A DNA stretch of 64,000 nt from Scyliorhinus canicula (lineage: Eukaryota). The notes beneath the pieces are model-generated. The model searched no databases, was not told the DNA's origin, and saw nothing but the letters and a program-made list of their open reading frames with translations. This document shows positions 5,071-49,518 of the stretch, piece by piece. Numbering within the stretch: the stretch's first letter is position 1; every line of letters starts with the position of its first letter. The translations under genes were made by a program, and so were the position numbers. The stretch spans positions 80,889,072 through 80,953,071 of the forward strand of contig NC_052154.1 in NCBI RefSeq assembly GCF_902713615.1. The letters run 5' to 3'.

Positions 5071-5326
5071 TGGGTGGTAGGTGGGGGAGACCCATACAGC
5101 TGGTGACACTCTGCAGAACCAGGACAGAAGGCGAAGCCTGACACAACCAAAGAGAGTGTGTTAGTCTGTTACTCTAGCTTAGTCTGGTATTGTCCCTTGT
5201 TGTCCCTGAAGACTTTGCGGAAGTTATACCTAGATTTCCTACATAGGTCAGGGTCACCTATCTTGAACGCCTCAGACCTGATCTTCAGTAGGGAGTGAAT
5301 CTTCCAGTCAAATCATGGTTTCCAGT

Positions 5327-6050
5327 TAGGGAACACATGTACTTCCGTCTTTGGCACGCAATCTTCTACACACTTACTGATCAGGTCTGTTGCGGTGGTG
5401 ACGTACTCATTTAGGTTGGCCTCCGAGTTCTTGAATATACACCAGTTCACTGACTCCAAGCAGTCAGATAAGATAACTTCCCATACAATAAGTTTCCTAA
5501 TGACTTATTTTAGTTTGCATGTAGTCACAGATGCTATTTGATAATTCACATCGCTGATTGTTTTTAGTAATGCGGTTGTGAGCTGTATTCACCAACCACT
5601 TAAATGTGTGCCCAGCAGCTATTCACATTCTGCTGTTAGTTACCACGTTCCAAAATTCTGACCCAGTAACGACCATGGAAGGGTGGTATTTTTCCAAGTC
5701 AGGATGATGTGTGACTTCAAGAAGAAACTTGAAGCGTTGCTTTTCCCATGGACCTGTTCTCATTGCCTATTTAAGTCGAATGAGTTGTGTCAATTTCTTG
5801 CAGACTTTCATTCTTCAAAACTGCAATAGTAAAGGACTAACCTTCTTAACCTCTACGTGCAAACTAAAACAAGTCATTAGGACACTTATTGTATGGGAAG
5901 TTAACTTATGTGACTGCTTGGAGTCAGTGAAATGATGTATATTCAAGAGCTCGGAGGCCAAGCTAAATGAGTATGTCACCACCACAACAGACCTCATCAG
6001 TAAGTGTGCAGAAGATTGCGTGCCAAAGACGGTAGTACATGCATTCCCTA
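5327..6050. repeat. 198-bp inverted repeat (arms 5327-5524 and 5853-6050) containing a Rex1/Babar-type LINE fragment
   Basis: The right arm is the reverse complement of the left at roughly 85-90% identity. Also present in copy B (13569-13766 / 14094-14291). Confidence 0.85.
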
Positions 6051-6139
6051 CTTAAACTCTCCTGATAAGAAAACCCTTCCATTCTGGGATCAACCGAGAG
6101 AACCTTCTATGGACTGCCTCCAGTGCCAGTGCCAGTGAG

Positions 6140-7291
6140 GTTTGCCGAAGAGCAGTGGGAGAGAGGCCATTTCTGGAGTGAGGCCACAGGGAGAGTGAGT
6201 TTTAAATGTGGGAATTTGAAGCAGAGCGGGGATTTGGTGATCAGGAAGAGATGCTCCTTGCTTTCTCTCCTTGATTTGTAACTTTTAAATCTTCAGGCAG
6301 TGGTCTTGCCCTGCTGCAGCAGGGACTGCAAGGTAATGGGCGAGATCGGTAAGTCTTTACAACTTTCATCAATTATAGTTTGAAATAGGTTTTGTGGTTG
6401 ATAATCTGTAATGGCTATAATTGCTACTGACGAAAACCAGCAAAGACGGGTCATAGATAATTGGATTTAATCTGATATCAAACATCTTCCAAAGCGTTCA
6501 TTTAAAAGGGTAAGTCACGGCAGGGGGACTCAACACCTTTGTTTGCTCCATGAGGGAGACTGAGAACATTTACAGTGCCCGGGGCCAGCGTGTGTGCAGG
6601 AAGTGTCTCCAGCTATAACTGCTGGAAGCCTGAGTTGCGGAGCTGAAGCGGCGGCTGGAGACACCGTGGAGCACCCGTGAGGTGGAGAGTATCGCGGATA
6701 ACACCTACAGAGAGGTGGTCACACCACAGGCTCAGACTCCACAGGCAGTAAAGGAATGGATTATCACCAGGCAGTGCAGGAGAGCTAGGCAGTCAGTGCC
6801 GGAATCTCCTATCGCAATTCCCCTGGAAGAGAAATATATTGTTTTGGATACTGTTGAGGGGAATGAGCTCCCAAGTGAAAGCAACAACTTCTAAATTCGT
6901 TGCACCACGTTTGGGTCTGCTGCAGAGAGAAGGAGTAAAAAGTGTGGTAATGCAATAGTTATAGGGGATTTGATTGGAAGGGGAACAGATAGTGGGTTTC
7001 TATGGCCGCAAATGACACCCCAGAAGGTATGGTGCCTCCCTGGTGGTCGGGTTAAAGATATCTTGGAGCGGTTACAGGACAGTCTGGATGGGGAGGGTGG
7101 ACAGCCAGCGGTCATGGTCGCATCGACACCAACAACATAGGTAAAAAAAATGAATGAGGTCCTGAAAACAGAATACAGGGTGTGAGGAAGAAAATTGAGA
7201 AGTCAGACCTTCAAAGTAGTAATCCCAGGATTACTACCAGTGCCAGGTGCTAGTCAGCGTTGAAATAGTAGGATATTTCAGATGAATATGT
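6140..7291 (+). mobile_element. CR1 5' part (ORF1 with zinc finger and SGNH-esterase remnant), truncated by the duplication junction
   Basis: CRKCLQL-like and AIVIGD motifs. In copy B (from about 14385) it continues into the ORF2 endonuclease up to about 17245. Confidence 0.75.
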
Positions 7292-18452: not shown

Positions 18453-19404
18453 TGTAGCCATGCTGGCCACGCAAAATGGACACTGAGCCAAACTAAAATG
18501 GAAGGCTGCTGGGAAACAGACAGTTCAGCCAGAACAGCAGTCTGCAAAGAGCAGTTTGCATTCTGCAGCAGCAGAAACCAGTTTGGGCTCAGGTAAAGAG
18601 ACCTTAGCTAGGTGCAAATGGCAAAACGCTTTGCATGCTAATGAGGCCATCAGACTTGAACACCCACACAATAGATACATTTGGTTCTGAATGGACACAT
18701 TCCAATCAAGACCCAGACATCGAGGCACCAGAAACCTCCGAACAAAAGGACATAAGAAACGCCCCCTCCATCACGGAGACCCCCTCGCATTGGGGAATTA
18801 ATCCAGTATCGATAAGAAATTGATCCAATAGGTAGAGCCCGCCCGAGAAGAGGGAAGGACAACGGAACCCCTATAAAAGATAGGGACCTCGTGTTGTCCG
18901 GTCTGTTAAACCTGTGCTCCGGCCTCGACTGACACCTGGTATCCTGACTCCAGCCGTTGAGCACCAGCCGCCGAAACCGTAAGTTCAACGCTCGCTACGC
19001 GATCCAAGCCCGCTAGACTCCCAAGTGCCAGAACGCTTGCTGAAGGCTGCAGACAAAACCAGGACGAAGGCCTCGTTCTCTGACCTTGCCTGTTCCTGTT
19101 AGATAAGTATTCTGTTTGCTTATGTTTAGTTGTAGCTTAGTCTCTTAGTGTGTGTGCATGAGTATTTATTATTAACTGTATAATAAATATTGATCGTTTG
19201 AACTTGACTAATCGGTGTATCGTCTTTATTACTTTGAATTTGACCTTGGAATACTTGTGACGTTGCCTATACGGCAGCTGGCGACTCCAGAGCTTAAATA
19301 ATTACATAGAACAGAGCCTAGCAGTGTTAAGCACACGTCGAACTCGGAGGCGTGTTAATACACTCCAATAAACGCGTTTTACGCCCATAGTAAAACGTGC
19401 AACA
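18453..19404 (+). repeat. 5' LTR (952 bp)
   Basis: tgtagcca...gtgcaaca. TATAAAA at 18872-18878, AATAAA at 19182 and 19367. Constant 8,856-bp offset to the 3' LTR; no difference seen by eye. Confidence 0.97.
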
Positions 19405-19409
19405 TTTAG

Positions 19410-19427
19410 TGGCGACTCTGATGGGAT
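19410..19427 (+). promoter_or_regulatory. Primer-binding site, tRNA-Ser(GCU)-like
   Basis: TGGCGACTCTGATGGGAT, 5 nt after the LTR. It matches 15/18 to the complement of the vertebrate tRNA-Ser(GCU) 3' end as I recall it (TGGCGACGAGGATGGGAT). Confidence 0.7.
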
Positions 19428-19723
19428 CCTGTTGTAAGTGGAAACACCACAGTGTTCAGGACCCTGAAATTTGAATTAGAACTCCAAATTGCAGAGAAAG
19501 AAAGAGATCACAAGTATTCAAGGTGTTCAAAATAATAAGCGAAATTCGGAAGTGTGTTTTAGTGCATGCGTACTAACAGGGCTGTAAGGTAAAACTGAAA
19601 GCTTTTTGTTGCGACAAACTTTCGGTAGTTTTGTAATCGGAAAATAGCGTAAGCCGTACCCTTTTCACGAAACACCACCCCAGCAACCCCCTGTTCCAAA
19701 TTATAAAAAGAGAGTCAGAGGAA

Positions 19724-21471
19724 ATGGCCATGCAGGCAATGGAACGTCTGATGGATCCAGCAAAGTTTGTGGTCGCAGCGACCAGCAGCAGTAGCAGAGT
19801 AGGCCAGTGTCCCACGTGGGAGCTGGAACTCCGCAAATATCTGCAGGGAAAGGGATGGCCCCTTTGGAAAGAGTTTTGTGCAAATGAGGAGACAGGTCCC
19901 GGAAGTATAGGTCATACTTGGTGGGAGAACCTCTCTCAGATACACAAAAAGAGTTTAAGTAAAGCACGCAAGCCGATGGCGATTGTGTCCTGCTTGGCAC
20001 AGTTGCGAGGCGCAGAGGAGGTCATCAGGACGCTCCGGGCAGATTTAGAGGAAAGGAACCGAATGAGTAAGGTCGATGTCAGGGACATCGAGAAAGAAAA
20101 CCTGGATCTTAAAGGGAAGTTGGCAGAGAAGGGTAGAGAGGTGGATGATGCCCAGAGGGCTCACCAGTCTTGTCTAGCTCATCTGAACAGTTCCCAGACC
20201 CAGTATGAGAAAGCCTATCAGGACGTGCAACGTGCCGTTCTGATAAGACAGGAATCGGAGAAGCAGGTGGAGGCATTGCAGAGGCAATGCTCCGATCTCA
20301 AAGCAGCTTTGAGAGCACTCCACGCTGCAACGACCGAACAAAGACAAAGCACAGTTGACCACGCGAAATGCAGAAAACAGATTGCGGAACTGCAATCTCT
20401 GCTTTCGGTGCAGAATGGCTTCCAAAGCACCTTTGGAGCTCAGTTAGATGGGGAAAACGCCCCAGATTGGCAGGAATTAAGCGAGACAGCGCAGCGTTAT
20501 GTTCAGGGAACATGTGCGCCCGCAGCTCAGCAGAAACGACAGGCACCCCAACCCCCCACAGCTCAGATCATAACCGCACCCATGAATCCCGTAACCACAC
20601 AGAGGAAAGCCGAATCAGAAGGCGCCCAGACATAACTTACACCACCCCTTTAACAGTAACCCAGCTAAGGGACGCTTGTGAAAAGATCACTCCGTTCCTC
20701 CCCACCGCAGACCCCCACCAGTTCTTTGCTAAGGTAAAGCAGCAGGCTACCATGTACGGCCTGGATGAGAGAGAGCAGGTTAAGCTCACCGTGTTGAGCT
20801 TAGACCAGAGTGTAGTGGCAGCCCTCCCCGACCCACAGAACGTGGCAGGAGGCAGCCTAGAGGAGATGCACACTGCTATTTTAGATGCCATCGGGTACAA
20901 TAGAGGTGACCCCGTAGAAGGCTTGAATAAGTGCAGGCAGAAGAGATCTGAACACCCCACAGCATTCGCCGGAAGGCTGTGGATTCACTTCAGCGCAGTT
21001 TTCGGACAGCTAGATAGAGCGCATTTAACCCGCGAAAACATGGTTAAGTGGACGCGCACAATTATCTCACACGCAACAGAAGCAGGACAGAGCGCTTGCA
21101 ATAATTACGACCCCTCAGAAGAGGCCCATAACGAAAAATGGGTCCTCAAAAGATTGTCCCGCGCTTGGGAGCAATCGCTTCAGGCAAAAGCAAAGGTTAG
21201 ATCCCCAGAAGAGGCTCAGGCTGCTGCAGATATCCAAGCAGTCAGAGAGCACCAGAAGCCCGCATGGGTAAATGAAGGCAAGAGCAGCCCTCAACAGAAA
21301 GGACAGGAATGCTATAACTGTGGACAGTTAGGGCATTGGGCAAAAGAGTGTAATGCACCCCAGCGATCTCAGAGAGGCCAGCAGACAGGCACTCTGAACC
21401 GCAACAAAGCAAAACCCATCCACAATGTAGTAGTACAGTCAGGACCCACCAATGTGGACGAGACGAACTGA
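19724..21471 (+). CDS. gag: Gag (about 582 aa if one C is restored at 20625-20627): N-terminal domain, long coiled coil, capsid, one CCHC knuckle
   Basis: ORFs 19724-20635 and 20368-21471 join as ...ESEGA(P)DITYTT... CYNCGQLGHWAKEC at 21310-21351. Confidence 0.88.
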
Positions 21472-24400
21472 CGGTGTTCGGGCTCCCCCACTTGGGTCTG
21501 TGACACACTATGGGACTCATCAGGGAGGCCCGTAGTCACGGCAAAAGTCAAAGGGAAGCCCATAGAGTTATTGTGGGACACAGGAGGATCCCGCACCACC
21601 ATTAACTCCACAACCACGGCACACGCAGACACGTGGCCGACCACCTCCACCATCACACTTAGCGGGTTCACCGGACACTCGCAGCAGGGACATATCACAG
21701 CACCCGTAGCGATCCAGCTAGGGAACATTAGCACAAGGCACCCCGTAGTTTTAGTAAATCTTCCCCGGACAGCAGAGCACATCCTGGGGATAGATTTTAT
21801 GAACACACACAGCTTGTCGTTCGACCCAGTGAACCAGTGTGTCTGGCGAATGGCGAGATCAGACAGAGCACCAGCCACCCTCACAGTAGGAGACTACGCT
21901 AATCGGATTAGCGCAGTGGGAGAGTACTCATTCGACCTGACTACACTCCACACCGACAGACAAATTAAGGCCCTACTAAACAAACACAGGACAGCATTTG
22001 CAAGTCACCGTCATGACTGTGGCAGAATGACTGGACAAGTTCATGTTACCGGACAGGACCCCCGACCGCAAAAGCAGTATAGATTTCCCCTCGAGGCAGA
22101 GGTGGAAATAGAAAAGGTTATAGGCAGCTTGTTGGACCAAGGTGTACTGAGAACGGTAGCCTCCACCAACAATGCCCCTATTTGGCCAGTGAGGAAGCCC
22201 GATGGATCATGGCGTCTGACCATCGATTATCGGGAACTCAACAAAGTAACCCCCGCAGTAGCCCCAACGGTAGCTACTAGTCCCGAGACCATGCTCAAGC
22301 AGGGTCTCAACGCCAAGTACTTCACGGTATTGGACATCAGTAATGGATTCTGGTCAATACCATTGGCAAAAGCGTGCCAATACAAATTCGCATTCACTTT
22401 TAAAACGCAGCAGTACACGTGGACATGCCTCCCACAAGGATTCCACAATTCACCCTCCATTTTCCACCGACAGCTGGCAAGTGGATTAGAAAAATTTTCC
22501 CGACCCGATTGTCTGGTACAGTATGTAGACGACCTACTACTGCAGACAGACACAAAGGCAGAGCACATTTCGCTTCTGGCCGAACTCCTGGAACTCTTAA
22601 CTGAAATTGGCTGTAAAGTTAACCCGAAAAAGGCCCAAATATTGGAAAGTAAAGTGATGTATTTGGGATCAGTCATCACGCACGGCAAACGCGAGATCGA
22701 ATTCAAAAGAATTGATTCGATTGTCAAATTGCCCCTTCCCCAGAATGTATCAGCCCTCCGGTCGTTTTTAGGACTGGTTGGCTATTGTCGGAACCACATC
22801 GACGGATTCGCGACAAAAGCCGCCCCACTTTCAGACCTCCTTAAGAAAGGAGCCCCCTGGGAATGGCTTCCGCAGCATACAGGCGCTGTGGAAGAGTTGA
22901 AACGAGCCCTTAGTGCAGCACCCGCGCTGCTAGTCCCCGACCAACTTTCACCGTACGCAATAGAGGTAGCGAGCACCGATCTGACCCTCTCGGCCGTGTT
23001 GCTTCAGGAACGGCACGAGCAGCTAAGACCAGTGGCTTATGCCTCCCGACTGTTAGACCCAGTAGAACAAGGATTTTCGGCCTGTGAGAGGCACCTCCTT
23101 GCTGTCTTCTGGGCAGTACAGTACTTTTCCTACATAACCGGACTAAACCCCATCACCATTCTAACCGAACACACACCCACACAGCTACTACTAGACGGTC
23201 GACTGAAGGACGGTTCAGTTAGCCAGATTAGGGCAGCTAGGTGGACCCTACTTTTACAAGGACGGGACATTACAGTAAAACGGACACGCACCCACACATA
23301 CTTAGCAGACAACCTCCAATACCCCGGACAGCCCCATGACTGTGAAATTGTAGCTCCCCTGCATAACACAGGACCCTTTTTAGCCAAAACACCCCCCAGG
23401 AAGATAGGGAACCCGAAACAAAGCCCCCAGCCCACAGACACGTGTGGACCCTTGAGGATTTATGTAGACGGTTCCTCCACAGTTTTAAATGGTGAGCGTA
23501 TCACAGGATGCGGCATCTATGTAGAGGACGCGCAGGGGCGCGCTCTCGAAGAAATCGCTCTTAAGTTACCAGGTCACTTAGGCGCGCAGGCAGCAGAGCT
23601 AGCAGCCATAGCGTACATAGTGGACCACCCCGATTCTTTCCCCAGCCCAGCAGACATATATTCAGACAGCTTATATGTCTGTAACAGTTTAACAGATTTC
23701 CTGCCCCTGTGGAGGACACGAGGTTTTGTCTCCGCAGACGGAAAACCCCTTCCATCAGCCCCCTTACTCCAGCATATTTTAGCGAAAGCGAAGGACAGGA
23801 CCTTCGGCATAATAAAAGTAAGAAGCCACCATAGGTCATCACCCCCTGGGAATGTAAAGGCCGACGCGTTGGCTAAGGCAGGTTCCAGGAGAGGACACTT
23901 ATGGACCCCCCCAGCTAGCGCACCAGCTAGCGCCCCTGTGAGCGCAGTCCAAGTCTCACAGACTGATATTAAAGATCTCGTGGCAGCACAAAAACAGGAC
24001 GGAGACCTCAGGGAGGTTTTCAAGGGAAACTTTGTGCCTGCTTACGAGCACTTTAAACACGCACTGACCACACATGAGGGTGTGATCATTAAGGACCGAC
24101 TTTATGTGGTCCCACAGCAGGACAGGAACCAGATGATTGCCTTGTTCCATGACGGACACGGGCATCAGGGAATTGATGCAACAACGAGGCACCTCAGGCA
24201 ACTCTGTTGGTGGCCTAATCTCAGGAATGATGTAACGCACTACATAGAGAATTGCCTGATTTGTGCTCAGAATAACCCGGACAGGTATTCTAAGAAGGCA
24301 CAACTTCGGCATACTCGCCCAGTTGACGGCCCTTGGACAAACCTCCAGATCGACTTTATAGGTCCATTGCCCCCTTGTCGGAATGGCTATAAATACGTTC

Positions 24401-25697
24401 TGGTGGTGATAGATACCTTTACCAAGTGGGTAGAGGCATTTCCCTCACGAACAAATACAGCAAAGACAGCTGCAAAGATCCTGACCCACCACATCTTCAC
24501 GAGATGGGGTTACCCCGAAGTATCGATTCGGACCAGGGATCTCACTTTACAGGACGGGTCATGAGGAACGTCCTGACAATATTCGGAATCAAACAGAACT
24601 TCCACATTGCGTATCATCCACAGTCCAGCGGGATTGTGGAGCGCATGAATCGGACCCTAAAAACTACCCTTAGGAAAATGGTTCAAGAGAACAATTCCAC
24701 ATGGGATTCAGTGCTCCCCTTTGCACTTATGTTCATAAGGAACACTGTCTCCACATCGACAGGATACACACCACACACACTCATGACCGGACGCCCTATG
24801 AAAGGTACAGAATTCCTTTTAGGACTGGACATGACAAGCCCCGAAGTGACGGCCCTCACACATGAAAAGGCAGTTAAAGAACTAGTTGAGACTGTGAGGT
24901 CTGCACAGCTCGCAGCCGCAGTCCAGCTAGGGAAACGCCGACAGCAACGTACTGCCTGTTTCAATAAGACCGTCCACACCACAGAATTCCAGGTTGGGCA
25001 ACAGGTAATGTTATCTGTTTATAACCCCAGCAGTTTTTTGGCTCCAAAATATTCCGGTCCCTACTCAATTTCGGACAAAATTAGCCCCTCCGTGTACAGA
25101 ATAAAGTATCCTAATGGAAAGACCGCGTGGTTCCATATAAACCAGTTAAAGGCATATGGAACACAGGCCAACCATGCTCACCATGTCCTGCTGGATGCAG
25201 CAGAACACTTCACCCCGCCCACCAGAGACACTTTTCCACCATCCCCCTCACAGACCAGTTCATCCACGGACTCGCCCACGACTCCGCCCACAGACCACTA
25301 CAGACCACACCCCGAGACGCCCACAAGCTGCCACAGCAGAGACAGTAGGACAGACACTGACTCTGAAGACAGCGACACCACACAGCCATACAGCCCACAC
25401 TGCACCAACTACGACCCCGACTCCAGTGACCCCATGGAACTCACTTACCTCAAAAACCCCGAACCACCACCCGACCCCGACTACCCCGACAACACACTCG
25501 ACGCTACACAATGGCACAGGGACAATTCCTACAGACTTGTCCGCAATGACGAAAGTGACCCCCGGTCACACAACTCCAAAATAGCATGCCTGATCCACAC
25601 AAGGGTGTGGGATCCGGGAGAGCAGGACGACGCAATGTCTGACTCCCGACACGGCAACCCCTTTGTGACCCTGTTCACAGAGGCAGAATCAAAGTGA
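21472..25697 (+). CDS. pol: Pol (about 1,408 aa if one G is restored at 24506-24509): protease, RT, tether, RNase H, integrase with a long C-terminal extension
   Basis: DTG at 21577, YVDD at 22522, degenerate RNase H at about 22950-23300, second RNase H YVDGS...AAELAA...YSDS...GNVKAD at about 23450-23890, HHCC, D-D-E, GPY motif. In frame with gag after a single TGA. Confidence 0.93.
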
Positions 25698-26632
25698 GGT
25701 GTCCAGATGATGTAAGATAGGAATCGTTTGAGGGAAACGATGTCCTTTCTGATGGAACCTGCACGTATGTTTGTCTTCGTTTTATGTTTGTTTGTTTCAG
25801 GAATGTACATTGTTCAGCTGGAGGATGGACATCTTCTTTTCAGCTGACAAGATTGTGACCACCTCACATACACGTTAGTTTGTCCGCAGATACTTCTGAG
25901 AACTTCGGTTTGATTGGAGATCTTTTCCAAAGTTGTAAGGCCACACGCCAAATAGCTTGTCCGCAGATATCTCTGAGAACTTCAGGGATGTCCTCAGTTG
26001 GAGCATCTTGGCTCCCTTGGTTTTTTAGGTGCCCCTCTATTCGGCGAAATAGAGGCTGCAGGTCATGGTAAACACATTCGTACCCGTTTCTTTCCAGGTT
26101 ACTCAGGCAGTGGACAAACGGCACTGAGGACCCGCCCTGTCTGAGAACCAACCCTTGGTCAGCCAAGCTCGGGTATGGCACAGCACGCCCTACCCGGGGA
26201 TCCCATCCAACTCATACCCGTAGCGGCCCATACGCAACTCATTCGGACGTTTCTTTCCAAATTTTGTTTTCATTTTACGTTAGGTAGCCCTTCGGCCGCC
26301 ATCCCACATGCTATTTACATCCGGGAACATTCGGATGGTAAATCAGCAAAGCCTGCGAGACGGCTCGCAGAAGGAAGGATTGTTAGGTGTATGCTGGTCT
26401 TTAAATTCGCTTTTTGAAAAAAAATGAGGGGAGTCACAGGGTGTGACTTAGCCAGTCATTTTTAAGGGTCAATTGGGTTTTGAAAGACAGATGCACTAAC
26501 AAGTAAAGGTCTTAAACTGTGTATTGACAGATACTGTGCTTGATCCCAAAGGTTTCAAAGGACGAGACAGAGGTCGAAGCCAGGATTGTCAATACCGGAG
26601 GAAGAAGGAAGAGAAAGAAGAAGAACAGCAAA

Positions 26633-26986
26633 ATGATGGAAGCCCACTTATTACTATTTAATGTCATATGTATATGTGTGGAAACAAGACACGTTTCCCC
26701 CACAACCCCCACCGTAAATGTTAGTACAACAAACCCCCAGTGCTCAGCTCTGATCAGCGAGGTTCAGACCTGGTGTACTAAATTCATGACGTGGTACTCC
26801 ATGTCCTACATAATCGAATCACTGTTGGTGATTGCGATCCTCACCATCCTAGTGCAGACCCTCAGGTTGAGGAAATGGAAGAGGAGAGCCTCTCGTTCCA
26901 GCACCTCACCCATCTATAGAGTGCAATCCCCCATCTTCGGATTCCACCAAACCCCTCAACCCCTCACTGATTACAACACTCTGTAA
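26633..26986 (+). CDS. Small type-I transmembrane protein (117 aa) in the env position; FAST-fusogen-like architecture
   Basis: ATG with A at -3. Signal-like MMEAHLLLFNVICICVET, T/P-rich stalk with NVS sequon, C-x10-C, TM YIIESLLVIAILTILVQTL, RLRKWKRR, C-terminal YNTL. Confidence 0.75.
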   Translation: MMEAHLLLFNVICICVETRHVSPTTPTVNVSTTNPQCSALISEVQTWCTKFMTWYSMSYIIESLLVIAILTILVQTLRLRKWKRRASRSSTSPIYRVQSPIFGFHQTPQPLTDYNTL

Positions 26987-27298
26987 ATAAAATTCAGCCA
27001 TGTATTATATTGTTCCATACTCGACTGCCGAGTTGGGAAGTGTTATGTTGTGGTGTGAATGGTTAAGATTTTAGAGTGATTAAATGTTTAAGTTAAGGTT
27101 AATAGTGATAGGTAGAGGTTCCCAATTGTAGTAATGCATGTCCCTTTGACATAGGGCCAAGTAGAAATGTTAGTTAAATTTTTTTTCTCTTCTTCCCATA
27201 GTTTAGAACAGAGTAGAACAGGAACTGGCAAGAGGTCAGAACACAAGGAGGCAAAGTACATAGGTGATCCTTCACAATAGTATGATTGTGAGGATCAC

Positions 27299-27308
27299 AA
27301 GGAGGGAA
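27299..27308 (+). promoter_or_regulatory. Polypurine tract
   Basis: aaggagggaa directly before the 3' LTR TG. Confidence 0.85.
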
Positions 27309-28260
27309 TGTAGCCATGCTGGCCACGCAAAATGGACACTGAGCCAAACTAAAATGGAAGGCTGCTGGGAAACAGACAGTTCAGCCAGAACAGCAGTCTG
27401 CAAAGAGCAGTTTGCATTCTGCAGCAGCAGAAACCAGTTTGGGCTCAGGTAAAGAGACCTTAGCTAGGTGCAAATGGCAAAACGCTTTGCATGCTAATGA
27501 GGCCATCAGACTTGAACACCCACACAATAGATACATTTGGTTCTGAATGGACACATTCCAATCAAGACCCAGACATCGAGGCACCAGAAACCTCCGAACA
27601 AAAGGACATAAGAAACGCCCCCTCCATCACGGAGACCCCCTCGCATTGGGGAATTAATCCAGTATCGATAAGAAATTGATCCAATAGGTAGAGCCCGCCC
27701 GAGAAGAGGGAAGGACAACGGAACCCCTATAAAAGATAGGGACCTCGTGTTGTCCGGTCTGTTAAACCTGTGCTCCGGCCTCGACTGACACCTGGTATCC
27801 TGACTCCAGCCGTTGAGCACCAGCCGCCGAAACCGTAAGTTCAACGCTCGCTACGCGATCCAAGCCCGCTAGACTCCCAAGTGCCAGAACGCTTGCTGAA
27901 GGCTGCAGACAAAACCAGGACGAAGGCCTCGTTCTCTGACCTTGCCTGTTCCTGTTAGATAAGTATTCTGTTTGCTTATGTTTAGTTGTAGCTTAGTCTC
28001 TTAGTGTGTGTGCATGAGTATTTATTATTAACTGTATAATAAATATTGATCGTTTGAACTTGACTAATCGGTGTATCGTCTTTATTACTTTGAATTTGAC
28101 CTTGGAATACTTGTGACGTTGCCTATACGGCAGCTGGCGACTCCAGAGCTTAAATAATTACATAGAACAGAGCCTAGCAGTGTTAAGCACACGTCGAACT
28201 CGGAGGCGTGTTAATACACTCCAATAAACGCGTTTTACGCCCATAGTAAAACGTGCAACA
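27309..28260 (+). repeat. 3' LTR (952 bp)
   Basis: Same sequence as the 5' LTR, followed by TSD ggct. Confidence 0.97.
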
Positions 28261-28344
28261 GGCTAAAGGTAGACAAGACTCCTACCCTGATGGAATGCAT
28301 CCCAGAGTGCTAAAAGAGATGGCAAGGAAATTGCAGATGCACTA

Positions 28345-29712
28345 GTGATGATTTACCAAAGTTCACTAGACTCTGGGGTGGTCCCGGTGGATTGGAAATT
28401 AGCAAACGTGACACCACTGTTTAAAAAAGGAGGTAGGCGCAGAGCAGGAAATTATAGGCCAGTGAGCTTAACTTCGGTAGTAGGGAAGATGCTGGAATCT
28501 ACCATCAAGGAAGAAATAGCGAGGCATCTGGATGGAAATTGTCCCATTGGGCAGACGCAGCATGGGTTCATAAAGGGCAGGTCGTGCCGAACAAATTTAG
28601 TCGGATTTTTTGAGGACATTACCAGTGCAGTAGATAACGGAGAGCGAATAGATGTGGTATATCTGGATTTCCAGAAAGCCTTTGACAAAGTGCCACACAA
28701 AAGGTTGCTGAATGAGATAAAGATGCATGGCATTAAGGGTAAAGTAGTAGCATGGATAGAGGATTGGTTAATTAATAGAAAGCAAAGAGTGGGGATTAAT
28801 GGGTGTTTCTCTGGTTGGCAATCAGTAGCTAGTGGTGTCCCTCAGGGATCCGTGTTGGGCCCACAATTGTTCACAATTTACATAGATGATTTGGAGTTGG
28901 GGACCAAGGGCAATGTGTCCAAGTTTGCAGATGACACTAAGATGAGTGGTAAAGCGAAAAGTGCAGAGGATACTGGAAGTCTGCAGAGGGATTTGGATAG
29001 GTTAAGTGAATGGGCTAGGGTCTGGCAGATGGAATGCAATGTTGACAAATGTGAGGTTATCCATTTTGGTAGGAATAACAGCAAACTGGATTATTATTCA
29101 AACGACGAAATATTAAAGCATGTTGCTGTGCAGAGAGACCTGGGTGTGCTAGTGCATGAGTCACAGAAAGTTGGTTTCCAGGTGCAACAGGTGATTAAGA
29201 AGGCAAATGGAATTTTGTCCTTCATTGCTAGAGGGATAGAGTTTAAGACTAGGGAGGTTATGCTGCAATTGTATAAGGTGTTGGTGAGGCCACACCTAGA
29301 GTATTGTGTTCAGTTTTGGTCTTCTTACTTGAGAAAGGACGTACTGGCACTGGAAGGTGTGCAGAATAGATTCACTAGGTTAATCCCAGAGCTGAAGTGG
29401 TTGGATTACGAGGGGAGGTTGAGTACACTGGGACTGTACTCTTTCGAATTTAGAAGGTTGAGGGGGGATCTTATAGAAACATTTAAAATTATGAAGGGAA
29501 TAGATAGGATAGATGCAGGCAGGTTCTTTCCACTGGCGGGTGAAAGCAGAACTCGGGGACATTGCCTCAAAATAAGGGGAAGTAGATTTAGGACTGAGTA
29601 TAGGAGGAACATCTTCACCCAAAGGGTTGTGAATCTATGGAATTCCTTGCCCAGTGAAGCAGTTGAGGCTCCTTCATTAAATGTTTTTAAGGTAAAGATA
29701 GATAGTTTTTGA
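28345..29712 (+). CDS. CR1 ORF2 reverse-transcriptase/C-terminal part (455 aa open)
   Basis: NYRPVSLTSVVGK, YLDFQKAFDKVPH, GVPQGSVLGP, FADDT motifs. Confidence 0.9.
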   Translation: MMIYQSSLDSGVVPVDWKLANVTPLFKKGGRRRAGNYRPVSLTSVVGKMLESTIKEEIARHLDGNCPIGQTQHGFIKGRSCRTNLVGFFEDITSAVDNGERIDVVYLDFQKAFDKVPHKRLLNEIKMHGIKGKVVAWIEDWLINRKQRVGINGCFSGWQSVASGVPQGSVLGPQLFTIYIDDLELGTKGNVSKFADDTKMSGKAKSAEDTGSLQRDLDRLSEWARVWQMECNVDKCEVIHFGRNNSKLDYYSNDEILKHVAVQRDLGVLVHESQKVGFQVQQVIKKANGILSFIARGIEFKTREVMLQLYKVLVRPHLEYCVQFWSSYLRKDVLALEGVQNRFTRLIPELKWLDYEGRLSTLGLYSFEFRRLRGDLIETFKIMKGIDRIDAGRFFPLAGESRTRGHCLKIRGSRFRTEYRRNIFTQRVVNLWNSLPSEAVEAPSLNVFKVKIDSF

Positions 29713-38371: not shown

Positions 38372-38432
38372 ATGTCGTCGAATTCGATCTTTCTCTTCAT
38401 GTTGCTGACTCTCCCGATGATCATTTCAACAG
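38372..38432 (+). CDS. VJ-C1 Ig-superfamily receptor, exon 1 (signal peptide)
   Basis: MSSNSIFLFMLLTLPMIIST(G), phase-1 donor G|gtatcg. Confidence 0.85.
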
Positions 38433-38629
38433 GTATCGGAATGTCCTCTATCCCAGAGGTCATATTTAATAAAACGTTTTTCACCGTTCGCCCATCAGTT
38501 TTATTAGATGTAATCCGTCCGTCTGTTATCGTTTTTCTCCTTTGCGTTTCCCTGCAAATATGTGAAAAGTCTCTGGTTTCTTTTTCAATAAAATTAATTA
38601 ACACAAACCTCAAATATATTTGATAGCAG

Positions 38630-38950
38630 GTGCTCCAGCAACTTCGATCAGCGTGTCTCAAAGTCCCAAACAGGTATCTATATTAAGGGGGACAAACATC
38701 ACCTTCTACTGCATAATACCACTTTCTCATGGCAATGTCGGGGTCGAAGTGCGTTGGTGGAAACAAGGTGAGAATAAATATCTCGCAAATGGAGTCGATG
38801 GCAGAAAACGATTTGATCTCAAAAGCAAAGGAGGTGGTTTATTTGAGCTGCGAAACGCGACTCTCCAGGACTCGGGAATCTATCACTGCGGAGTGATCCG
38901 TGACGGAAAATATAGTGGAAATGGGACAGGATCCAGTTTAACTGTTTGGG
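38630..38950 (+). CDS. VJ-C1 receptor, exon 2: germline-joined VJ-type domain (NKp30-like)
   Basis: SVSQSP...FYC...VRWWKQ...DSGIYHC...GNGTGSSLTV. cag| acceptor, G|gtaagt donor, 321 bp, phase 1-1. Confidence 0.95.
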
Positions 38951-39444
38951 GTAAGTGAGCGGAATGGCGGGGAACATCAGATTTGTCGTTGTTCTTTTGT
39001 ACCACCTTTGATGTTATGAAATATGGTGCACAATGTATAGTTATGCAGCAGAACATGATATTTAATTCGGTGTGTTATTCCAAACTGCTGGAAGTACCCA
39101 GCAATTCAGGGAATATCTGTGGAGAGGGAGACAATGTTAAACCTCAGGTCTATAACTTTTTCAAGAGGAATGTTACCGGATTCATTCATAATACAATTTT
39201 TACACCAGGTTTAGCCTGAGGGTGGTCCACCGCACTCTAGATACCCCAACCAGAGGAACCAACCTCGCCTTGTCTACCCTGGCAACCACTTTAAGAATCT
39301 TGTATATTCTAAAGAAAACACCTCTGATTCTTCTTAAACCCGCACTCTGCCTGTGCGAGCCTCCAGAAATTACGAGAACTTCACTGTTCTTATCAGTGTC
39401 GACAGGTTGTTTGTTTCTCTCTGGGGGGCACGGCTGGCGGACCT

Positions 39445-39611
39445 TTTGTTACTGGGCTAAATAGCTGACTTGGAATGCAGAACAAGACAGCAGGGCGGGT
39501 TCAATTCGCCTACCGGCCTCCCCGAACAGGCGCCGGAACGTGGCGACTACGGGATTTTCACGGTAACTTCATTGAAGCCAACTTGAGACAATAAGCGATT
39601 ATTATTATTAA
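39445..39611 (+). mobile_element. Short tRNA-derived SINE (intron 2)
   Basis: Same family as 2147-2312. Confidence 0.8.
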
Positions 39612-39704
39612 CATAATGGGAAGAGAATGCGATACCATTTTCCTCTCAATCCTGATGGGTAACGTCTCTCCACTGACCTGATTTTCCTCATTTTCTGTTC
39701 GCAG

Positions 39705-40016
39705 CTGCACCAACTCCGTTAAAGATTCTCCTGAAGCCTCTCGCAAGTAAGCCATCTACGTCTCTGACTCTTGTGTGTCAAACGGCTGCGTTTTACCCGG
39801 ATGATTTGACCCTCCTTTGGTATAAAGATGGCACCAATATCACAGCTGAGATGAACCCAATTAAACAGCGGAACTCTGAAGGACTCTACGAAGTTTCCAG
39901 TTTTTTGGAGGAGCCGCAGCCTGTGCGGGACAAGGCTGTTTACATCTGTTTGGTCACTCACATCTCCCTCCCGACTCCCGCCATTGCCATCCACACTGTT
40001 ACCAACTCCTGCCCAG
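39705..40016 (+). CDS. VJ-C1 receptor, exon 3: C1-set domain
   Basis: LTLVCQTAAFYPDDLTLLWYKDG...NSEGLYEVSSFL...YICLVTH. ttttctgttcgcag| acceptor, G|gtatga donor, 312 bp, phase 1-1. Confidence 0.95.
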
Positions 40017-41238
40017 GTATGAGGCCAGCAGGTCAAGAAGCAATCTGCAAATTCTGAAAGGACCATTTATTGGAACTTATTGACATTAATAATAATAGAT
40101 ATAATTATAAAATACACTCCGCAAAATATAATATCTAAGGAAATCTTAACGGTTCCATGAAAACATTTGTTTAAATTTTTTTTTATAAAGGGAATGAGCA
40201 GGCGGATTTCCTCATCCATTCAATCATTTTACATGTTGTACATATAACTAAATTTGGGGCCACTTCTTAAACTGATATTATTGATCCCCAGTTTTACTAT
40301 TCCTCACACGAGTTTACAGAACATGAAGTGTCGATTTGCATCAGCGGCCTCACTGCGAACGGGTCAGAAGTCTGCTTTGTGGATAGTCCCTAATCTGACC
40401 ACTTTCTGCAGAACGGTCGTTTGGACCCGCAGCATTAACTCTGTTTCTCTCTGCCAGACTGTCTGAATTTATCCAGCATTTTCTGTTTTTATTTCTCTCC
40501 ATTCTTCAGCAGTTTGGAGCTGGGAAGAATTTCATATATTTCATTTCGGATTTGCTACCATTAAAAGCGGTTGAACATGTCTGATTACCGTCTAATTAAC
40601 AGGCAACCGAAATTAAATTTTAGGAAGATTTGTAAGCATTGCTTTTGAAGGGGATTTCCTTCCCTTTTTGGCGGGGTCTTCAGTTAATAAGCTGCCGATA
40701 ATTGATTAAAATTAAAAGAATAATTTGTTAAAATTAAATGAAAAACTATTCCGCTCAACCATGTCTGATTTGGCCCGATTAATCACCAAAACGTGGAAGA
40801 GCGGAAGAAAATTTAAGTACAAGGAAAGGCCTTTTTGACAATCGGAATGTTAACCCACGCCAATATTTAGGACATCCGAAACTGGTACTCTTCCTCGGAG
40901 ATTATTCTGACATTGTGCTATCCTTTCTGAAAACATATTACTTTTACGTGCAAATTATGATTGTAAATGTCATTATCCCTGGACTTCTGTAGATGAGTGT
41001 TTAATAAGAAGTACAATGCGAAACATAAATGTGTGAAATTTGATCCGGCTGCTTTTATTTGTTGACATAGAATCTGGAAAAATGAATTAATATTACCTTT
41101 AAATTATGCTTTCCCCAGACTGCCCTGCATAGTCGCTGCATAGATGAGCACTGGTTTACCTAATTCATTATCGCGAGAGCCAGGATAGGTAATGGCCGAA
41201 ACAAATTAACACTGAGCACCCACCATTTGCAATTGCAG

Positions 41239-41349
41239 ATTCTGCTGGTAAATATCGTTACCTCTGGGCTATTAGATGTACCGTGGGTGGATTGGTGTTT
41301 CTGGTGCTTATAATCATCATTGGAGCGGAATTCTGTTTGAAGAATAAGG
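41239..41349 (+). CDS. VJ-C1 receptor, exon 4: transmembrane exon with Arg
   Basis: DSAGKYRYLWAIRCTVGGLVFLVLIIIIGAEFCLKNK. ttgcag| acceptor, G|gtaagc donor, phase 1-1. Confidence 0.88.
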
Positions 41350-43242: not shown

Positions 43243-45418
43243 TAAAAATAAATGTTTTTTATTGGGTTTTTGAACAAAGTATATTTATGTACACAGATTA
43301 AGAAATATAGAAGAGAAGGGCACATTTAAACATACCAGAAAAAAGCAATAATAAAAAAAATAAAAAAAAAAATAGAATAACTGGTAGGGTATTGTGCACC
43401 CGCTCAACAAGTGGCAAAATTATTTACAATACATAAGTAGGCGACTGTTTGGGGGGGGGGGGGGGGGGGGGGGGGTGGAGACTGGGGAGTGGTTATACAT
43501 TTGGGTGCCGGAGAAACAATTAAAGTGGGCAATACTCGAATGGGTTTGGTGTTTCTTCTCCCGGACAGATCTCACTGCCATTGTCATCCTGCACTCACCT
43601 CCACTTCAGCCGTTCCTCCTGTCTTTTGCCTGTATTCTCCTTGTTCTCTGTTCCTGTAGATGCCAAGTTTGTTATTGTATCCCGTGCCCTCCTTCCAGCT
43701 ATCATTTCTCTGCCTCCCCCCCCCCCACTCCCTGCTTCTCCACTCTTGTTCCCTGTCCCTTCCCTCCCCCCCCCCCCCCCCCCCGCGCTTCCCCCCCCCC
43801 CCCCCACCCCTCCTGTGGTTCGACTTTCTTTCCACTTAGGTTTAGCTGTGTGTCCCCTCTCCCGGGCTATCTACCCCTCTCATGGTTTGGCTACTTTCCC
43901 CTGATTCTTGGCTACCTGGCTATCCTTCTGCTTGTTCGTTGGCCACAAACAGGTCCCAGAACAATTGAGTGAATGGCTCCCACATTCTGTGGAAGTCGTC
44001 GTCTGACCCTCGGATGGTGAATTTGATTTTCTCCATTTGGATAGATTCCGAGAGGTCGGAGAGCCAGTCTGCAGCTTTGGGTGGGGCTGCTGACCGCCAG
44101 CCAAACAGGATTCTACGGTGGGCGATCAGGGAGGAAAAGGCAAGGGCGTCCGCCCTCCTCCCCAGGAATAGATCTGGCTGGTCTGAAACCCCAAAGACCG
44201 CCACTTTCGGGCATGGCTCCACCCTCATCCCCATCACTTTGGACATTGCCTCAAAGAAGGCTGTCCAGTACCCCACATGTCTGGGGCAAGACCAGAACAT
44301 GTAGGCGTGGTTGGCCGGGCATCCTTGGCACCGTTCACATCTATCCTCCACCTCCAGGAAGAACCTACTCATACGGGGTCTTGTTAACGGGCTGCATGTC
44401 CCACTTTTAGCTGCGTCAGGCTGAGCCTTGTGCACGTGGAGGTGGTGTTGACCCTGCGCCGTGCTTCGCTCCAGAGTCCCCACCTATTTTAATCCCCAGG
44501 TCCTCCTCCCATTTCTTTCTTGTTGCGTCCAGTATGGTGTTGGCCCTTTCTACTAGTCGGTCACACATGTCACTACAGTTTCCTTTACCTAATATGCTTG
44601 CATCCAGTAACTCTTCCAGTAATTTCTGGCATGGCGGTTGTGGATACGTCCTTGTCTACTTTCGTAGGAAGTTTTTGAGTTGTAGATAACTTAGCTCATT
44701 CCCCCTGGCTAGCTGTAATTTCTCTATCAGTTTGTCCAGTGATGCGATCGTGCCATCTGTGTATAGGTCACTGACTGGCAAGTGTCCCTCCATCCTGTCC
44801 CCACCTTTTGAAGGTGGCGTCAGTCATCGCTGGTGTGAACCTATGGTTGTTGCAGATGGGAGCTTTGTCCAACATTTTGGTCAGGGCAAATTGCTGCCGT
44901 AGTTTGTTCCAGAATTGGAGAGTGGCTATCACCACCGGGCTGCTGGAATGTTTTTTGGGTGGGGATGGGAGTGCTGCCGTGGCGAGGGCCCGGAGGGAGG
45001 TCCCCATGCGGGAGGCGTCTTCTGCGCACACCCGCTCGGCTTTTGGCTCCTTGATTCATGACCTTATTCGCTTGGCCGTCGCTGCCCAGTGGTATAATTG
45101 TAGGTTATACAATTGTAGGCTAGCCCTCCCCCGGATTTTGTTTTTGTAGGACCTTCTTTGGGATCCTAGCATTCTTCTCCCACCCCGATACGAACGCCAT
45201 GATTAGTTTGTCTAGTGCTTTGAAAAAGGCCTTGGGGACGTAGATCGGAATGTGGTTCCGATCTACGAAGTAGGAAGAGGGACCTGGGCTGTACATTCAT
45301 CTTGATCATCTGGACTCTCCCCGCGAGGGAGAGTCAGAGTGTGTTCCATCTTTGCAGGTCCTTTTTTACTTCCTCCATCAGACTGCTGAGGTTCCATTTG
45401 TAGATCCCTTTCCAGTAC
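43243..45418 (-). mobile_element. 5'-truncated L1 (ORF2 3' part + 3'UTR + A-rich tail) with a 13-bp TSD
   Basis: GCAATGGAATTTT at 43230-43242 and 45419-45431. The translation matches the L1 ORF2 at 62940-64000. Confidence 0.92.
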
Positions 45419-47420: not shown

Positions 47421-49518
47421 CCATTCAAAACTTGTTTTGATAATCATTTGATATTTGCTGAGACGTTGGTGCCGGTGGTTAAAGAAAGAGTGCAAATCAC
47501 ATGGGTAGTTTCTTCAACACATGCAAAATAAAGATATGTCCAATCATCGGAAGGATATTCTTGCGATGACATTACACGTCCACGATGCTGAATCTGCCTC
47601 CAGTTTTATCCTATCTGTAGCGTTTTACTATAATTCTATGGAATTAAGTGTCAGTTACAATAGGCGCACGAATTTCAGGACTCAACATTGACCATCAGTA
47701 TGTATATTAACTGTAGTGTATGCATTTTTCTAGGGAATGAAGCGTGACACGTTCCTGAGAACACTGAAAAGATTAACATGTGGAACCCATATGTCGCCTG
47801 TGCTTTTGCGAGATTAACAAGTGTTGCGAAATATGGAGTGGCTGGGCAGGTTTAGAAAACTAGGTAAAGAACATATTCAGTGGCTCATCTCGCTGCAGTA
47901 GTACTCGTTTAAATTTAGCTGTTATTGATTTAAATATCAAAATGTACCTCGTGTTCCGCACCTATATTTATTCGACACACGGTTCACTGTAATTACAGAA
48001 ACAGAGAATCCTCATATTAAACGGACATTTTACATGTTTTCCATTGTGAACTTTTCTTACTCACTGACAACTGGAAACCGCAGCCGGATCGCCTGAAGGC
48101 GCATGAATTGTTCCTAATATTTCACATTCCAATATTATGCCACGTGTGTTCTTAAATACATTTTCGGGTAGTTTGTTAATTTATCTACACACGACTATTA
48201 GCGCATCTCCGCTATACACATGCCACTTTCCTTAATGCAAGTACTGCAATGTTGTAATAATGATCAAATTATGGATAACTAGGATTGTAGATACCTGGGA
48301 ACACCACCACCTGGATGTTCCTCTCTTAGTCATCCACCATCCTGACTTGGAAATATATCGCCGTTCATTCACTGTGGCAGGGCCAAATTCCTGGGAGTCC
48401 CTCCCTAACAGCACTGTGTGTATCTACACCGCAGGAACGGCAGTGATTTAAGAAGGTAGTTCACCACCATCTTCTCAAGGCAATTCCAGATAATAAATCC
48501 GGGACTCGACAGCAACACACGTAAATTATTCTTTTTTAAAACAATCAATTTGTAAATTGTGCAGACGTTTCTCAAATATCAAGACTATATATCCTGAGTT
48601 GTGCAAGTTTTATTCAAACGTCTTTCGATTGCAACAATTTTTATTAGTACCAACTAATCCTGTCCTGGCACAGTATTGTATGGAAGAAATGTGATGGGAT
48701 GTGTTGCTGATCAGTTTCATCCGCAGCATGAACCTGGCACAAGGTGGAAGGTCGTCGTGATGTCACATTAAGGTAACATCCATGAATATATTGGTTGTTC
48801 CGGAATCCCTTTAAGCAACAGCATAGCTTTTTAAGTAGCGAGACAAAACAGCAGCCTGTGTATCGATAATCCCCTGTTTAACACTGAGGAGTCTGGTATC
48901 ATTTAGAACACTGTGCTTTCCCTTTAAGTACTGGCTACATTTTGTTACGATTGCGACAATAGAGGTTAGTATTGTTATTATAATGCTCACAAAGAGGCGC
49001 CCGAATCCCGCCCAACGCTCAGGCATGAGAACAAAGCCGCAGCATCGAGTGCAAATACACACAAACACCAAATGCGATGACATGACGCTGTGAATGCCCA
49101 GTGTAAAGATATTTATCACAGAGCACTAAAACGCGTACACTATGCAAAGGGTAAACATATAAATGAAAATGGATAGTGGTCTTGGAAAACACAAATATAG
49201 CAAAATTAACTATTTAATTCTGTCTTAATTGGTCACGTTGTCCTTTTAATTTCTCACCGATCACTATCAGAAGGCTACTTACTTAATGATTTTGACGTCA
49301 TGGCGAGTTGTGCATTTCACAACAGTTATACGGTTGGGAGCGATGAGGCCGGATTTTGTTTAGCCAGTTGATTATTTTTAGACCTTTACATCAGCACGTT
49401 GGTAAAATGGTTCTCAGATTTACAAATAAATGTTTGTTTCAGGCTTATATCACAAATATTCAAATTAGGCACGCATGATACAAACAAACGCTGGAACTTT
49501 TCTGAACATTTATATTTC

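What the first reader, a model, noticed from the sequence alone, without database searches (positions are those of the whole stretch)
38372..41349. Non-rearranging VJ-C1-TM antigen-receptor-like gene
Seen: four phase-1 exons assemble without stops into leader, a V domain with a built-in J-like G strand (GTGSSLTV, GxGTxLxV type), a C1 domain and TM. No RSS flanks the V exon. Established: C1-set domains are largely restricted to Ig/TCR/MHC/tapasin/SIRP, and germline-joined VJ plus C1 is the proposed pre-RAG receptor architecture (VJC1/PRARP-type genes). Mammalian NKp30 has the VJ domain but no C1. Inference: this is a shark NKp30-related or PRARP-related receptor, informative about antigen-receptor origins, and probably one of a cluster.
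Basis: partly seen in the sequence, partly recalled or inferred. Interest (0 to 1): 0.75.

Follow-up and report, generated by a model that had tools for sequence, protein, structure and literature searches.

The report
Catshark activating V-C1 paired receptor gene
This is a real, intact small-spotted catshark gene, already predicted in RefSeq as "SIRP beta-1-like", for a surface receptor with one antibody-like V domain and one C1 domain. It looks like the activating partner of an almost identical inhibitory receptor, in a large, apparently unstudied gene family of sharks, rays and chimaeras.

Summary
Four phase-1 exons (leader, V with a built-in J-like strand, C1, stalk/TM) splice into an open frame, and no RSS flanks the V exon. 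I found a fifth exon (47734-47747) that adds four residues and the stop.

The spliced product is 100% identical to Scyliorhinus canicula XP_038662972.1 ("signal-regulatory protein beta-1-like"), and the CDS span matches that model exactly (9349 bp). So the gene is already annotated, though I found no study of it.

It has an Arg in the TM segment and a roughly seven-residue tail, which marks it as an activating type. The same chromosome carries a near-identical activating copy and an inhibitory twin (XP_038662970.1), which lacks the TM Arg and has two ITIM/ITSM-type tyrosine motifs. Within a species the ectodomains are 97-98% identical but the stalk/TM only 50-62%. Across species, TM segments of the same signalling type are more alike than those of opposite types. 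This points to an old activating/inhibitory split with later ectodomain homogenisation.

Every homologue whose source I could identify is chondrichthyan. Nothing linked the gene specifically to NKp30, SIRP or UrIg, and PRARP could not be tested.

The scan has already found this family at other loci of this genome. It is a useful member of a little-studied family, not a new kind of gene.

The parts
38372..38432 (+). Exon 1: start codon and most of the signal peptide (MSSNSIFLFMLLTLPMIIST, then the first base of Gly). An alternative in-frame start at 38399 is the one used by the RefSeq model. The donor is cag|gt and the boundary is phase 1.
38630..38950 (+). Exon 2: end of the leader plus a V-set domain with a built-in J-like G strand (GNGTGSSLTVW). 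It carries three N-glycosylation sequons. A tandem NAGNAG acceptor also allows a start at 38627, adding one Ala, as in XP_038662972.1.
   Evidence: AF2 model strands
39705..40016 (+). Exon 3: C1-set domain (FYPDDLTLLW ... YICLVTH), followed by a membrane-proximal Cys (NSCP).
41239..41349 (+). Exon 4: short stalk and the transmembrane segment, with an Arg near its outer end (LWAIRCTVGGLVFLVLIIIIGAEFCL), then KNK. The phase-1 donor is g|gtaag.
   Evidence: TM helix in the AF2 model
47734..47747 (+). Exon 5, coding part: completes Gly, then Asn-Glu-Ala-stop. The acceptor is tttttctag|gg. The end of the 3'UTR is not determined; the first poly(A)-signal-like hexamers are at 48016 and 48492.

Best explanation
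The locus is the small-spotted catshark gene for XP_038662972.1. It encodes a type I membrane glycoprotein of about 272 residues: signal peptide, one non-rearranging V domain with a germline J-like strand, one C1 domain, a short stalk with a Cys, a TM helix with an Arg near the outer leaflet, and a cytoplasmic tail of about seven residues (KNKGNEA).

I read it as the activating half of a paired-receptor set. The V domain binds an unknown ligand. The TM Arg recruits an acidic-TM, ITAM-bearing adaptor (FcR-gamma, CD3-zeta or DAP12 type), which triggers the cell. The near-identical inhibitory twin (XP_038662970.1) would bind the same ligand and signal through ITIM/ITSM-type tyrosines and SHP-type phosphatases.

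Shown here: gene structure, domain types, identity to the RefSeq model, the existence of the twin, the discordance between ectodomain and TM similarity, and the spread of the family across chondrichthyans. Inferred: adaptor pairing, signalling direction, ligand binding through the V domain, and gene conversion as the cause of ectodomain homogenisation.
For: Exons and frame.

Domain types: V-set and C1-set.

Identity to the model: 100% identity to P0196 (XP_038662972.1), including the GNEA end. The CDS span of 9349 bp equals the gene model's span.

Paralogues on the same 198.79 Mb chromosome: P0169/P0194, activating, about 97% identical, and P0195, 328 aa, with no TM Arg and a tail carrying VTYAAV and TAYAQI.

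Ectodomain versus TM identity: within a species, activating versus inhibitory ectodomains are 97-98% identical but stalk/TM only 50-62%. Across Scyliorhinus and Mustelus, inhibitory-inhibitory TM is 78%, activating-activating 64%, cross-type 56-57%, and ectodomains 76-78% whatever the type.

Tree: the three catshark genes form one clade (SH-aLRT 99). The Mustelus activating/inhibitory pair is its sister. The activating/inhibitory label changes at least 10 times across the family.

Family size and range: 78 representatives at E<1e-10 in an exhaustive HMMER search. Every hit I could attribute by source name or contig, about 95, is chondrichthyan.

AF2 model: pLDDT 86, with V, C1 and a TM helix.
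Against: No expression data could be examined, so transcription rests on the RefSeq model alone. No ligand, adaptor or cell type is known. I did not check whether catshark has FcR-gamma, CD3-zeta or DAP12 genes.

The TM also holds a Glu near its inner end, which is unusual and unexplained.

The short tail could reflect an incomplete model, although the paralogue and the Mustelus activating form also end a few residues after the TM.

Gene conversion is inferred from protein identities only. No paralogue DNA could be fetched.
Confidence: 0.75

Rival explanations
1. It is a shark NKp30 (NCR3) family member. On this view the family is the cartilaginous-fish expansion of NCR3, and the C1 domain is an ancestral feature lost in tetrapods.
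For: It shares with NKp30 a germline VJ-type V domain with an N-glycosylation sequon in the G strand (GNGT), a TM Arg and a very short tail (the NKp30 features come from my own knowledge). Some family members have predicted V-only isoforms that skip C1. A published paper on shark 'NCR3 family genes' (Kinlein et al. 2021, cited) could not be read, so overlap with that family is not excluded.
Against: NCR3 is not among the top 30 Swiss-Prot structural neighbours of the V domain. CD79b, TCR V, Ig kappa/lambda V, CD8-beta and PD-1 come first, all at about 1e-6. No NKp30 chain is in the top 60 PDB sequence matches. No protein named NCR3 was retrieved by three profile searches. The C1 exon is part of the RefSeq model. 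Unchecked earlier notes place the catshark PSMB8/class I region on another sequence piece.
Confidence: 0.1
2. It is a true SIRP-beta orthologue, as the RefSeq name implies.
For: The V domain has a J-like strand followed by a C1-set domain. The family has activating and inhibitory forms with similar ectodomains. SIRP-gamma and SIRP-alpha are among the best solved C1 matches, and SIRP-alpha appears among Foldseek hits.
Against: SIRPs have three Ig domains (V-C1-C1) and SIRP-beta uses a TM Lys with DAP12 (own knowledge). Here there is one C1 and an Arg near the outer leaflet. Per-domain scores of the C1 exon are about equal for an Ig lambda constant domain (28.3 bits), UrIg2 C1 (26.7) and SIRP-gamma D2 (26.1). 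Foldseek ranks butyrophilins/B7, SIRP-alpha and TCR-beta alike at about 20% identity. RefSeq names for family members are inconsistent: SIRP-alpha-like, tapasin-related-like, Ig lambda-like, CD276, NCR3LG1-like, MHC II-like.
Confidence: 0.08
3. It is the cartilaginous-fish counterpart of the PRARP family or another relic of the pre-RAG VJ-C1 receptor. It would then bear directly on antigen-receptor origins.
For: The architecture is the same as I recall for PRARP in non-avian vertebrates: non-rearranging VJ, C1, TM and an ITIM tail in the inhibitory members (own knowledge of Fu et al. 2019; the paper is cited). The closest V neighbours are antigen-receptor V domains. The C1 exon is about as close to Ig lambda C and UrIg2 C1 as to anything else.
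Against: No PRARP sequence could be obtained, so nothing was tested. No non-chondrichthyan V-C1 homologue was identified among the hits I could attribute. The similarity to antigen-receptor domains is generic, at about 20% identity.
Confidence: 0.12
4. It is a non-functional or unexpressed copy, a recent duplicate drifting toward pseudogene status.
For: It sits among transposable-element sequences: LINE and retrovirus-like ORFs on both sides and a 6.4 kb fourth intron that appears rich in repeats. It differs from its activating paralogue only by amino-acid changes, 8 in 206 ectodomain positions.
Against: All five exons are open with canonical splice sites. The conserved Cys/Trp framework, the J-like motif and the C1 hallmarks are intact. 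A RefSeq model exists with exactly this product.
Confidence: 0.05

Closest known systems
SIRP family (SIRP-alpha, -beta, -gamma) of tetrapods
   Same: A non-rearranging V domain with a J-like strand, followed by C1-set domain(s). Paired inhibitory (ITIM) and activating (charged TM, short tail) members have near-identical ectodomains. The RefSeq automatic name points here.
   Different: One C1 domain, not two. A TM Arg near the outer leaflet, not a mid-membrane Lys. No sequence affinity for SIRP beyond that for Ig light-chain C or UrIg2 C1.
NKp30 (NCR3)
   Same: A germline VJ-type V domain, an N-glycan sequon in the G strand, a TM Arg and a minimal tail.
   Different: This gene has a C1 domain. 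No specific V-domain similarity was detected. It belongs to a large family with inhibitory members. It is apparently not in the MHC (unchecked notes).
[quoted passage not shown] 2019)
   Same: VJ-C1-TM architecture with ITIM-bearing members, and no rearrangement.
   Different: The relationship is untested. PRARP was described from bony vertebrates (own recollection), whereas this family was found here only in chondrichthyans and includes activating forms.
UrIg / UrIg2 of elasmobranchs (PMC12227049)
   Same: A non-rearranging VJ exon with a split leader, followed by C1-type domains. UrIg2 is the second-best solved match to the C1 exon.
   Different: UrIg has three C domains and is secreted. UrIg2 has nine to eleven. 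This gene has one C1, a TM Arg, and belongs to a multigene activating/inhibitory family.
Ig light chains and TCR chains
   Same: The same V-C1 two-domain layout. Antibody light chains are the best PDB structural matches to the whole model.
   Different: V and J are already joined in the germline with no RSS. About 20% identity.

Membership tests
NKp30 / NCR3 | Ectodomain made of a single VJ-type Ig domain, with no C domain | tested here: not met
   A C1-set exon (Pfam 3.2e-11) is spliced in, both in frame and in the RefSeq product.
NKp30 / NCR3 | Specific sequence or structure similarity of the V domain to NCR3 | tested here: inconclusive
   NCR3 is absent from the top 30 Swiss-Prot Foldseek hits and NKp30 chains from the top 60 PDB phmmer hits. 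No NCR3 sequence was available for a direct tree.
NKp30 / NCR3 | TM Arg and short tail, signalling through CD3-zeta or FcR-gamma | tested here: inconclusive
   The Arg in the TM and the roughly 7-residue tail are present. Adaptor pairing is not testable in silico.
NKp30 / NCR3 | MHC linkage | not testable with these tools
   The chromosome DNA could not be fetched. Unchecked earlier notes put PSMB8/class I on another piece.
SIRP | V-C1-C1 three-domain ectodomain | tested here: not met
   There is only one C1 exon between the V and TM exons.
SIRP | Closer in sequence to SIRP domains than to other C1 or V domains | tested here: not met
   C1 per-domain bit scores: Ig lambda C 28.3, UrIg2 C1 26.7, SIRP-gamma D2 26.1. 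No SIRP V chain is in the top 60 for the V exon.
SIRP | Paired inhibitory and activating members with near-identical ectodomains | tested here: met
   Ectodomains 97-98% identical against stalk/TM 50-62%. The twin P0195 carries ITIM/ITSM-type motifs.
PRARP | Non-rearranging VJ plus C1 plus TM, with ITIM in the tail | tested here: inconclusive
   The architecture is met for the family's inhibitory members. This gene is the activating form. The definition is recalled from memory because the paper is not held.
PRARP | Sequence homology to PRARP genes of bony vertebrates | not testable with these tools
   No PRARP sequence was retrievable. The searches returned only chondrichthyan proteins among attributable hits.
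UrIg / UrIg2 | VJ followed by three or more C1-type domains | tested here: not met
   A single C1 exon, against 3 or 9-11 C domains in UrIg and UrIg2.
Rearranging antigen receptors (IgL, TCR) | RSS-flanked V segment separate from J | tested here: not met
   The J-like strand lies within the V exon and no RSS adjoins it.

The most novel reading that the evidence does not exclude
The family is the cartilaginous-fish descendant of the ancestral non-rearranging VJ-C1 receptor lineage, homologous to PRARP and/or close to the stock from which antigen-receptor chains arose. Its members would pair through the V domains and the stalk Cys into TCR-like dimers. The activating/inhibitory pairs would co-evolve with a polymorphic self or pathogen ligand.
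Probability: 0.1. Interest if true: 0.75.

Novelty: new member of a known kind. Interest (0 to 1): 0.42.

Why it matters
Paired activating/inhibitory receptors with homogenised ectodomains are typical of host-pathogen arms races in mammals (SIRP, KIR, PILR, CEACAM). Finding the same pattern in a V(J)-C1 family shared by sharks, rays and chimaeras suggests this regulatory logic, built on an antigen-receptor-like chain, is as old as jawed vertebrates.

The family is hidden under at least seven inconsistent automatic names, so it is easy to overlook in comparative work on the origin of Ig and TCR. For this particular gene the practical gain is modest. It confirms the RefSeq model, assigns the gene to the activating type, and identifies its inhibitory twin.

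Tried and rejected
1. Looked for further copies in the window with tblastn of the three exons. Only chance-level hits.

2. RSS scan. Nothing next to the V exon; the hits look like SINE tails.

3. PDB profile searches with family V and C1 alignments. Rankings were dominated by multi-domain chains (titin, Robo, whole antibodies) and did not discriminate.

4. Foldseek of the full model and of the V-only model. Only generic V-C1 and V matches at about 20% identity, so no family assignment.

5. ESM Atlas look-alikes. Only automatically named V+C1 clusters.

6. Profile searches for non-chondrichthyan relatives or proteins named NCR3. None found, but the word prefilter limits reach.

7. Key papers could not be read: Kinlein 2021 on the shark NCR3 family, Flajnik 2012, Ohta 2019, Ohta and Flajnik 2015, and UrIg 2023.

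8. DNA of the catshark paralogues could not be fetched, so there is no dN/dS or conversion-tract analysis.

9. Synteny. Heptranchias loci showed no neighbouring genes within 10 kb.

10. A possible conserved soluble isoform from read-through of the C1 donor. The predicted peptide resembles the C-terminus of a Chiloscyllium model, but in Heptranchias only the first few intron bases are conserved. I rejected it as weak.

11. Considered and rejected the idea that V-only proteins form a separate NKp30-like subfamily. They are predicted isoforms of V-C1 genes.
Full report
**Observation.** The sequence at 38372-41349 contains four exons with canonical AG/GT boundaries, all in phase 1.
- E1, 38372-38432, encodes a hydrophobic leader.
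- E2, 38630-38950, encodes 106 residues with the V-domain hallmarks (Cys, Trp, the DSGIYHC motif) and ends in GNGTGSSLTVW.
- E3, 39705-40016, encodes a domain with FYPDDLTLLW and YICLVTH.
- E4, 41239-41349, encodes a short stalk and a hydrophobic segment that holds an Arg.

Joined, they give 268 codons without a stop. Pfam scores E2 as V-set (2.9e-9, end to end) and E3 as C1-set (3.2e-11). A scan for heptamer-spacer-nonamer signals found nothing beside the V exon. The only weak match in the region is most likely a SINE tail, because near-identical matches recur elsewhere in the window.

**Identity of the gene.** An exhaustive HMMER search of 1.84 billion representative proteins with the V exon returned a family of 78 representatives at E<1e-10. 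Profile searches and cluster look-ups gave names and species.
- One cluster member, P0196 (XP_038662972.1), is named "signal-regulatory protein beta-1-like" from Scyliorhinus canicula. It is identical to the spliced window product over its whole length and adds four C-terminal residues, GNEA.
- Those residues are encoded at 47734-47747, behind a good acceptor (tttttctag|gg), 6.4 kb downstream of E4.
- The distance from the second in-frame ATG (38399, the model's start) to the stop (47747) is 9349 bp. That is exactly the span recorded for that gene in GCA_902713615.2.
- The model uses a tandem acceptor 3 nt upstream of 38630, which inserts one Ala. The paralogue's two RefSeq isoforms show both acceptor choices.

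So the window is catshark DNA and the gene is already a RefSeq prediction. The accessible literature held no study of it.

**What kind of receptor.** The TM segment carries an Arg near its outer end, and only about seven residues (KNKGNEA) follow the membrane. The same 90% cluster holds two more catshark genes on the same chromosome.
- XP_038662022/023 is a second activating copy, about 97% identical, with an identical TM.
- XP_038662970.1 has 328 residues. Its ectodomain is 97% identical, but its TM lacks the Arg and its 68-residue tail carries VTYAAV and TAYAQI, which are ITIM/ITSM-type motifs.
- Mustelus asterias has the same pair (P0170 and P0197).

Identity counts give the following.

| Comparison | Ectodomain | Stalk/TM |
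|---|---|---|
| Activating vs inhibitory, same species | 97-98% | 50-62% |
| Inhibitory vs inhibitory, across the two genera | 76-78% | 78% |
| Activating vs activating, across the two genera | 76-78% | 64% |
| Activating vs inhibitory, across the two genera | 76-78% | 56-57% |

In an ectodomain tree the three catshark genes form one clade (SH-aLRT 99). The Mustelus pair is its sister (99). Across the family the activating/inhibitory label changes at least ten times.

The simplest reading is that the two signalling modules are older than the Scyliorhinus-Mustelus split. The ligand-binding exons would then have been homogenised within each species, as in mammalian paired receptors. This is inferred from proteins only, because paralogue DNA could not be fetched.

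**The family.**
- Members have V-C1-TM, with either long tails carrying one to five ITIM/ITSM-type motifs or short tails with a TM Arg.
- V-only proteins are predicted isoforms of V-C1 genes.
- Every hit I could attribute by source name or contig, about 95, comes from a chondrichthyan. The genera are Callorhinchus, Heptranchias, Heterodontus, Chiloscyllium, Hemiscyllium, Mustelus, Scyliorhinus, Hypanus, Hemitrygon, Mobula, Narcine, Pristis, Leucoraja and Amblyraja.
- Three divergent unnamed hits lie on contigs whose lengths match chromosomes of Heterodontus, Chiloscyllium punctatum and Heptranchias.
- Within a species, most members share one chromosome-scale contig.
- In Heptranchias they lie at 5.8, 14.6, 15.5 and 19.0 Mb of CM068652.1, so the family is dispersed and not a tight cluster.
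- Automatic names are inconsistent: SIRP-alpha-like, SIRP-beta-like, tapasin-related-like, Ig lambda-like, CD276, NCR3LG1-like, PD-L1-like, MHC class II-like.

**Relation to known families.**
- The C1 exon's best per-domain matches among solved structures are an Ig lambda constant domain (28.3 bits), UrIg2 C1 (26.7) and SIRP-gamma D2 (26.1). These are effectively equal.
- The V exon's best solved matches are VH, TCR V-alpha, the amphioxus IgVJ-C2 protein and shark NAR, all weak at about 1e-4. No NKp30 or SIRP chain is among the top 60.
- An AF2 model of the full protein (pLDDT 86) matches butyrophilin/B7 proteins, SIRP-alpha and TCR-beta in Swiss-Prot and antibody light chains in the PDB. All are near 1e-15 and about 20% identity.
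- The V-only model (pLDDT 86) matches CD79b, TCR and Ig V regions, CD8-beta, PD-1 and CD7. NCR3 is not in the top 30.

The protein is therefore a generic antigen-receptor-like VJ-C1 chain with no demonstrable membership in NKp30, SIRP or UrIg. PRARP could not be tested. UrIg and UrIg2 differ by having three or nine to eleven C domains.

One caveat remains. The paper on shark NCR3 family genes (Kinlein et al. 2021) is not held, so I cannot exclude that part of this family has been described there.

**Context.**
- The rest of the window holds transposable-element sequence: a retrovirus-like element with protease, RT, two RNase H domains and integrase, LINE reverse transcriptases, what look like SINE copies, and a 99%-identical tandem duplication of about 8.25 kb.
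- Earlier notes of this scan report the same family at other loci of this genome, including a head-to-head inhibitory/activating pair 187 kb downstream and several genes about 11 Mb downstream.
- They also place the PSMB8/class I region on another sequence piece and B7H6 78 Mb away on this chromosome. I did not verify those notes.

**Verdict.** It is already in RefSeq under a misleading name and is best understood as the activating member of a paired V(J)-C1 receptor set. It belongs to a chondrichthyan-wide family for which I found no published study. It is interesting as a family, but this locus is one more member and not a new kind of gene.

Noticed in passing
window 1-7291 and 8251-15532: A tandem duplication with a period of about 8.25 kb. 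The copies are 99% identical over 7.3 kb. They contain repeat-like ORFs and no recognisable gene.
   Followed up: partly
window 21472-25694 (+): A long pol-type ORF with aspartyl protease, reverse transcriptase, two kinds of RNase H domain and integrase (Pfam). It belongs to the retrovirus-like element that another reader already noted at 18453-28260.
   Followed up: partly
window 60336-62900 (+) and 28291-29709 (+): LINE-type ORFs. One has an endonuclease/exonuclease/phosphatase domain plus reverse transcriptase (855 aa open). The other is a reverse-transcriptase fragment (473 aa).
   Followed up: partly
window 38625-38630: A tandem NAGNAG acceptor (tagcag) at the start of the V exon. RefSeq models of this gene and its paralogue use both sites, so products differ by one Ala just before the mature N-terminus.
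   Followed up: yes
window 40017-40057: Read-through of the C1 exon donor would add GMRPAGQEAICKF and a stop, giving a soluble form. A Chiloscyllium plagiosum model (XP_043563364.1) ends in a similar peptide (GMRP...ICKI). In Heptranchias only the first intron bases are conserved. This may just be donor-site conservation.
   Followed up: partly
window 43441-43480 and 43720-43810: Long homopolymer tracts of G and C inside the 6.4 kb fourth intron of the receptor gene.
   Followed up: no
window 57349-58747: A GC-rich simple-repeat block that is open in all six frames (Gly/Arg/Glu-rich repeats). It is probably a minisatellite and not coding sequence.
   Followed up: no
L002 6523-6666 (Heptranchias perlo CM068652.1): A partial V-exon remnant (52% identity over 48 residues to the window V exon) lies 3.7 kb upstream of the V exon of the gene for XP_067853517.1.
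   Followed up: no
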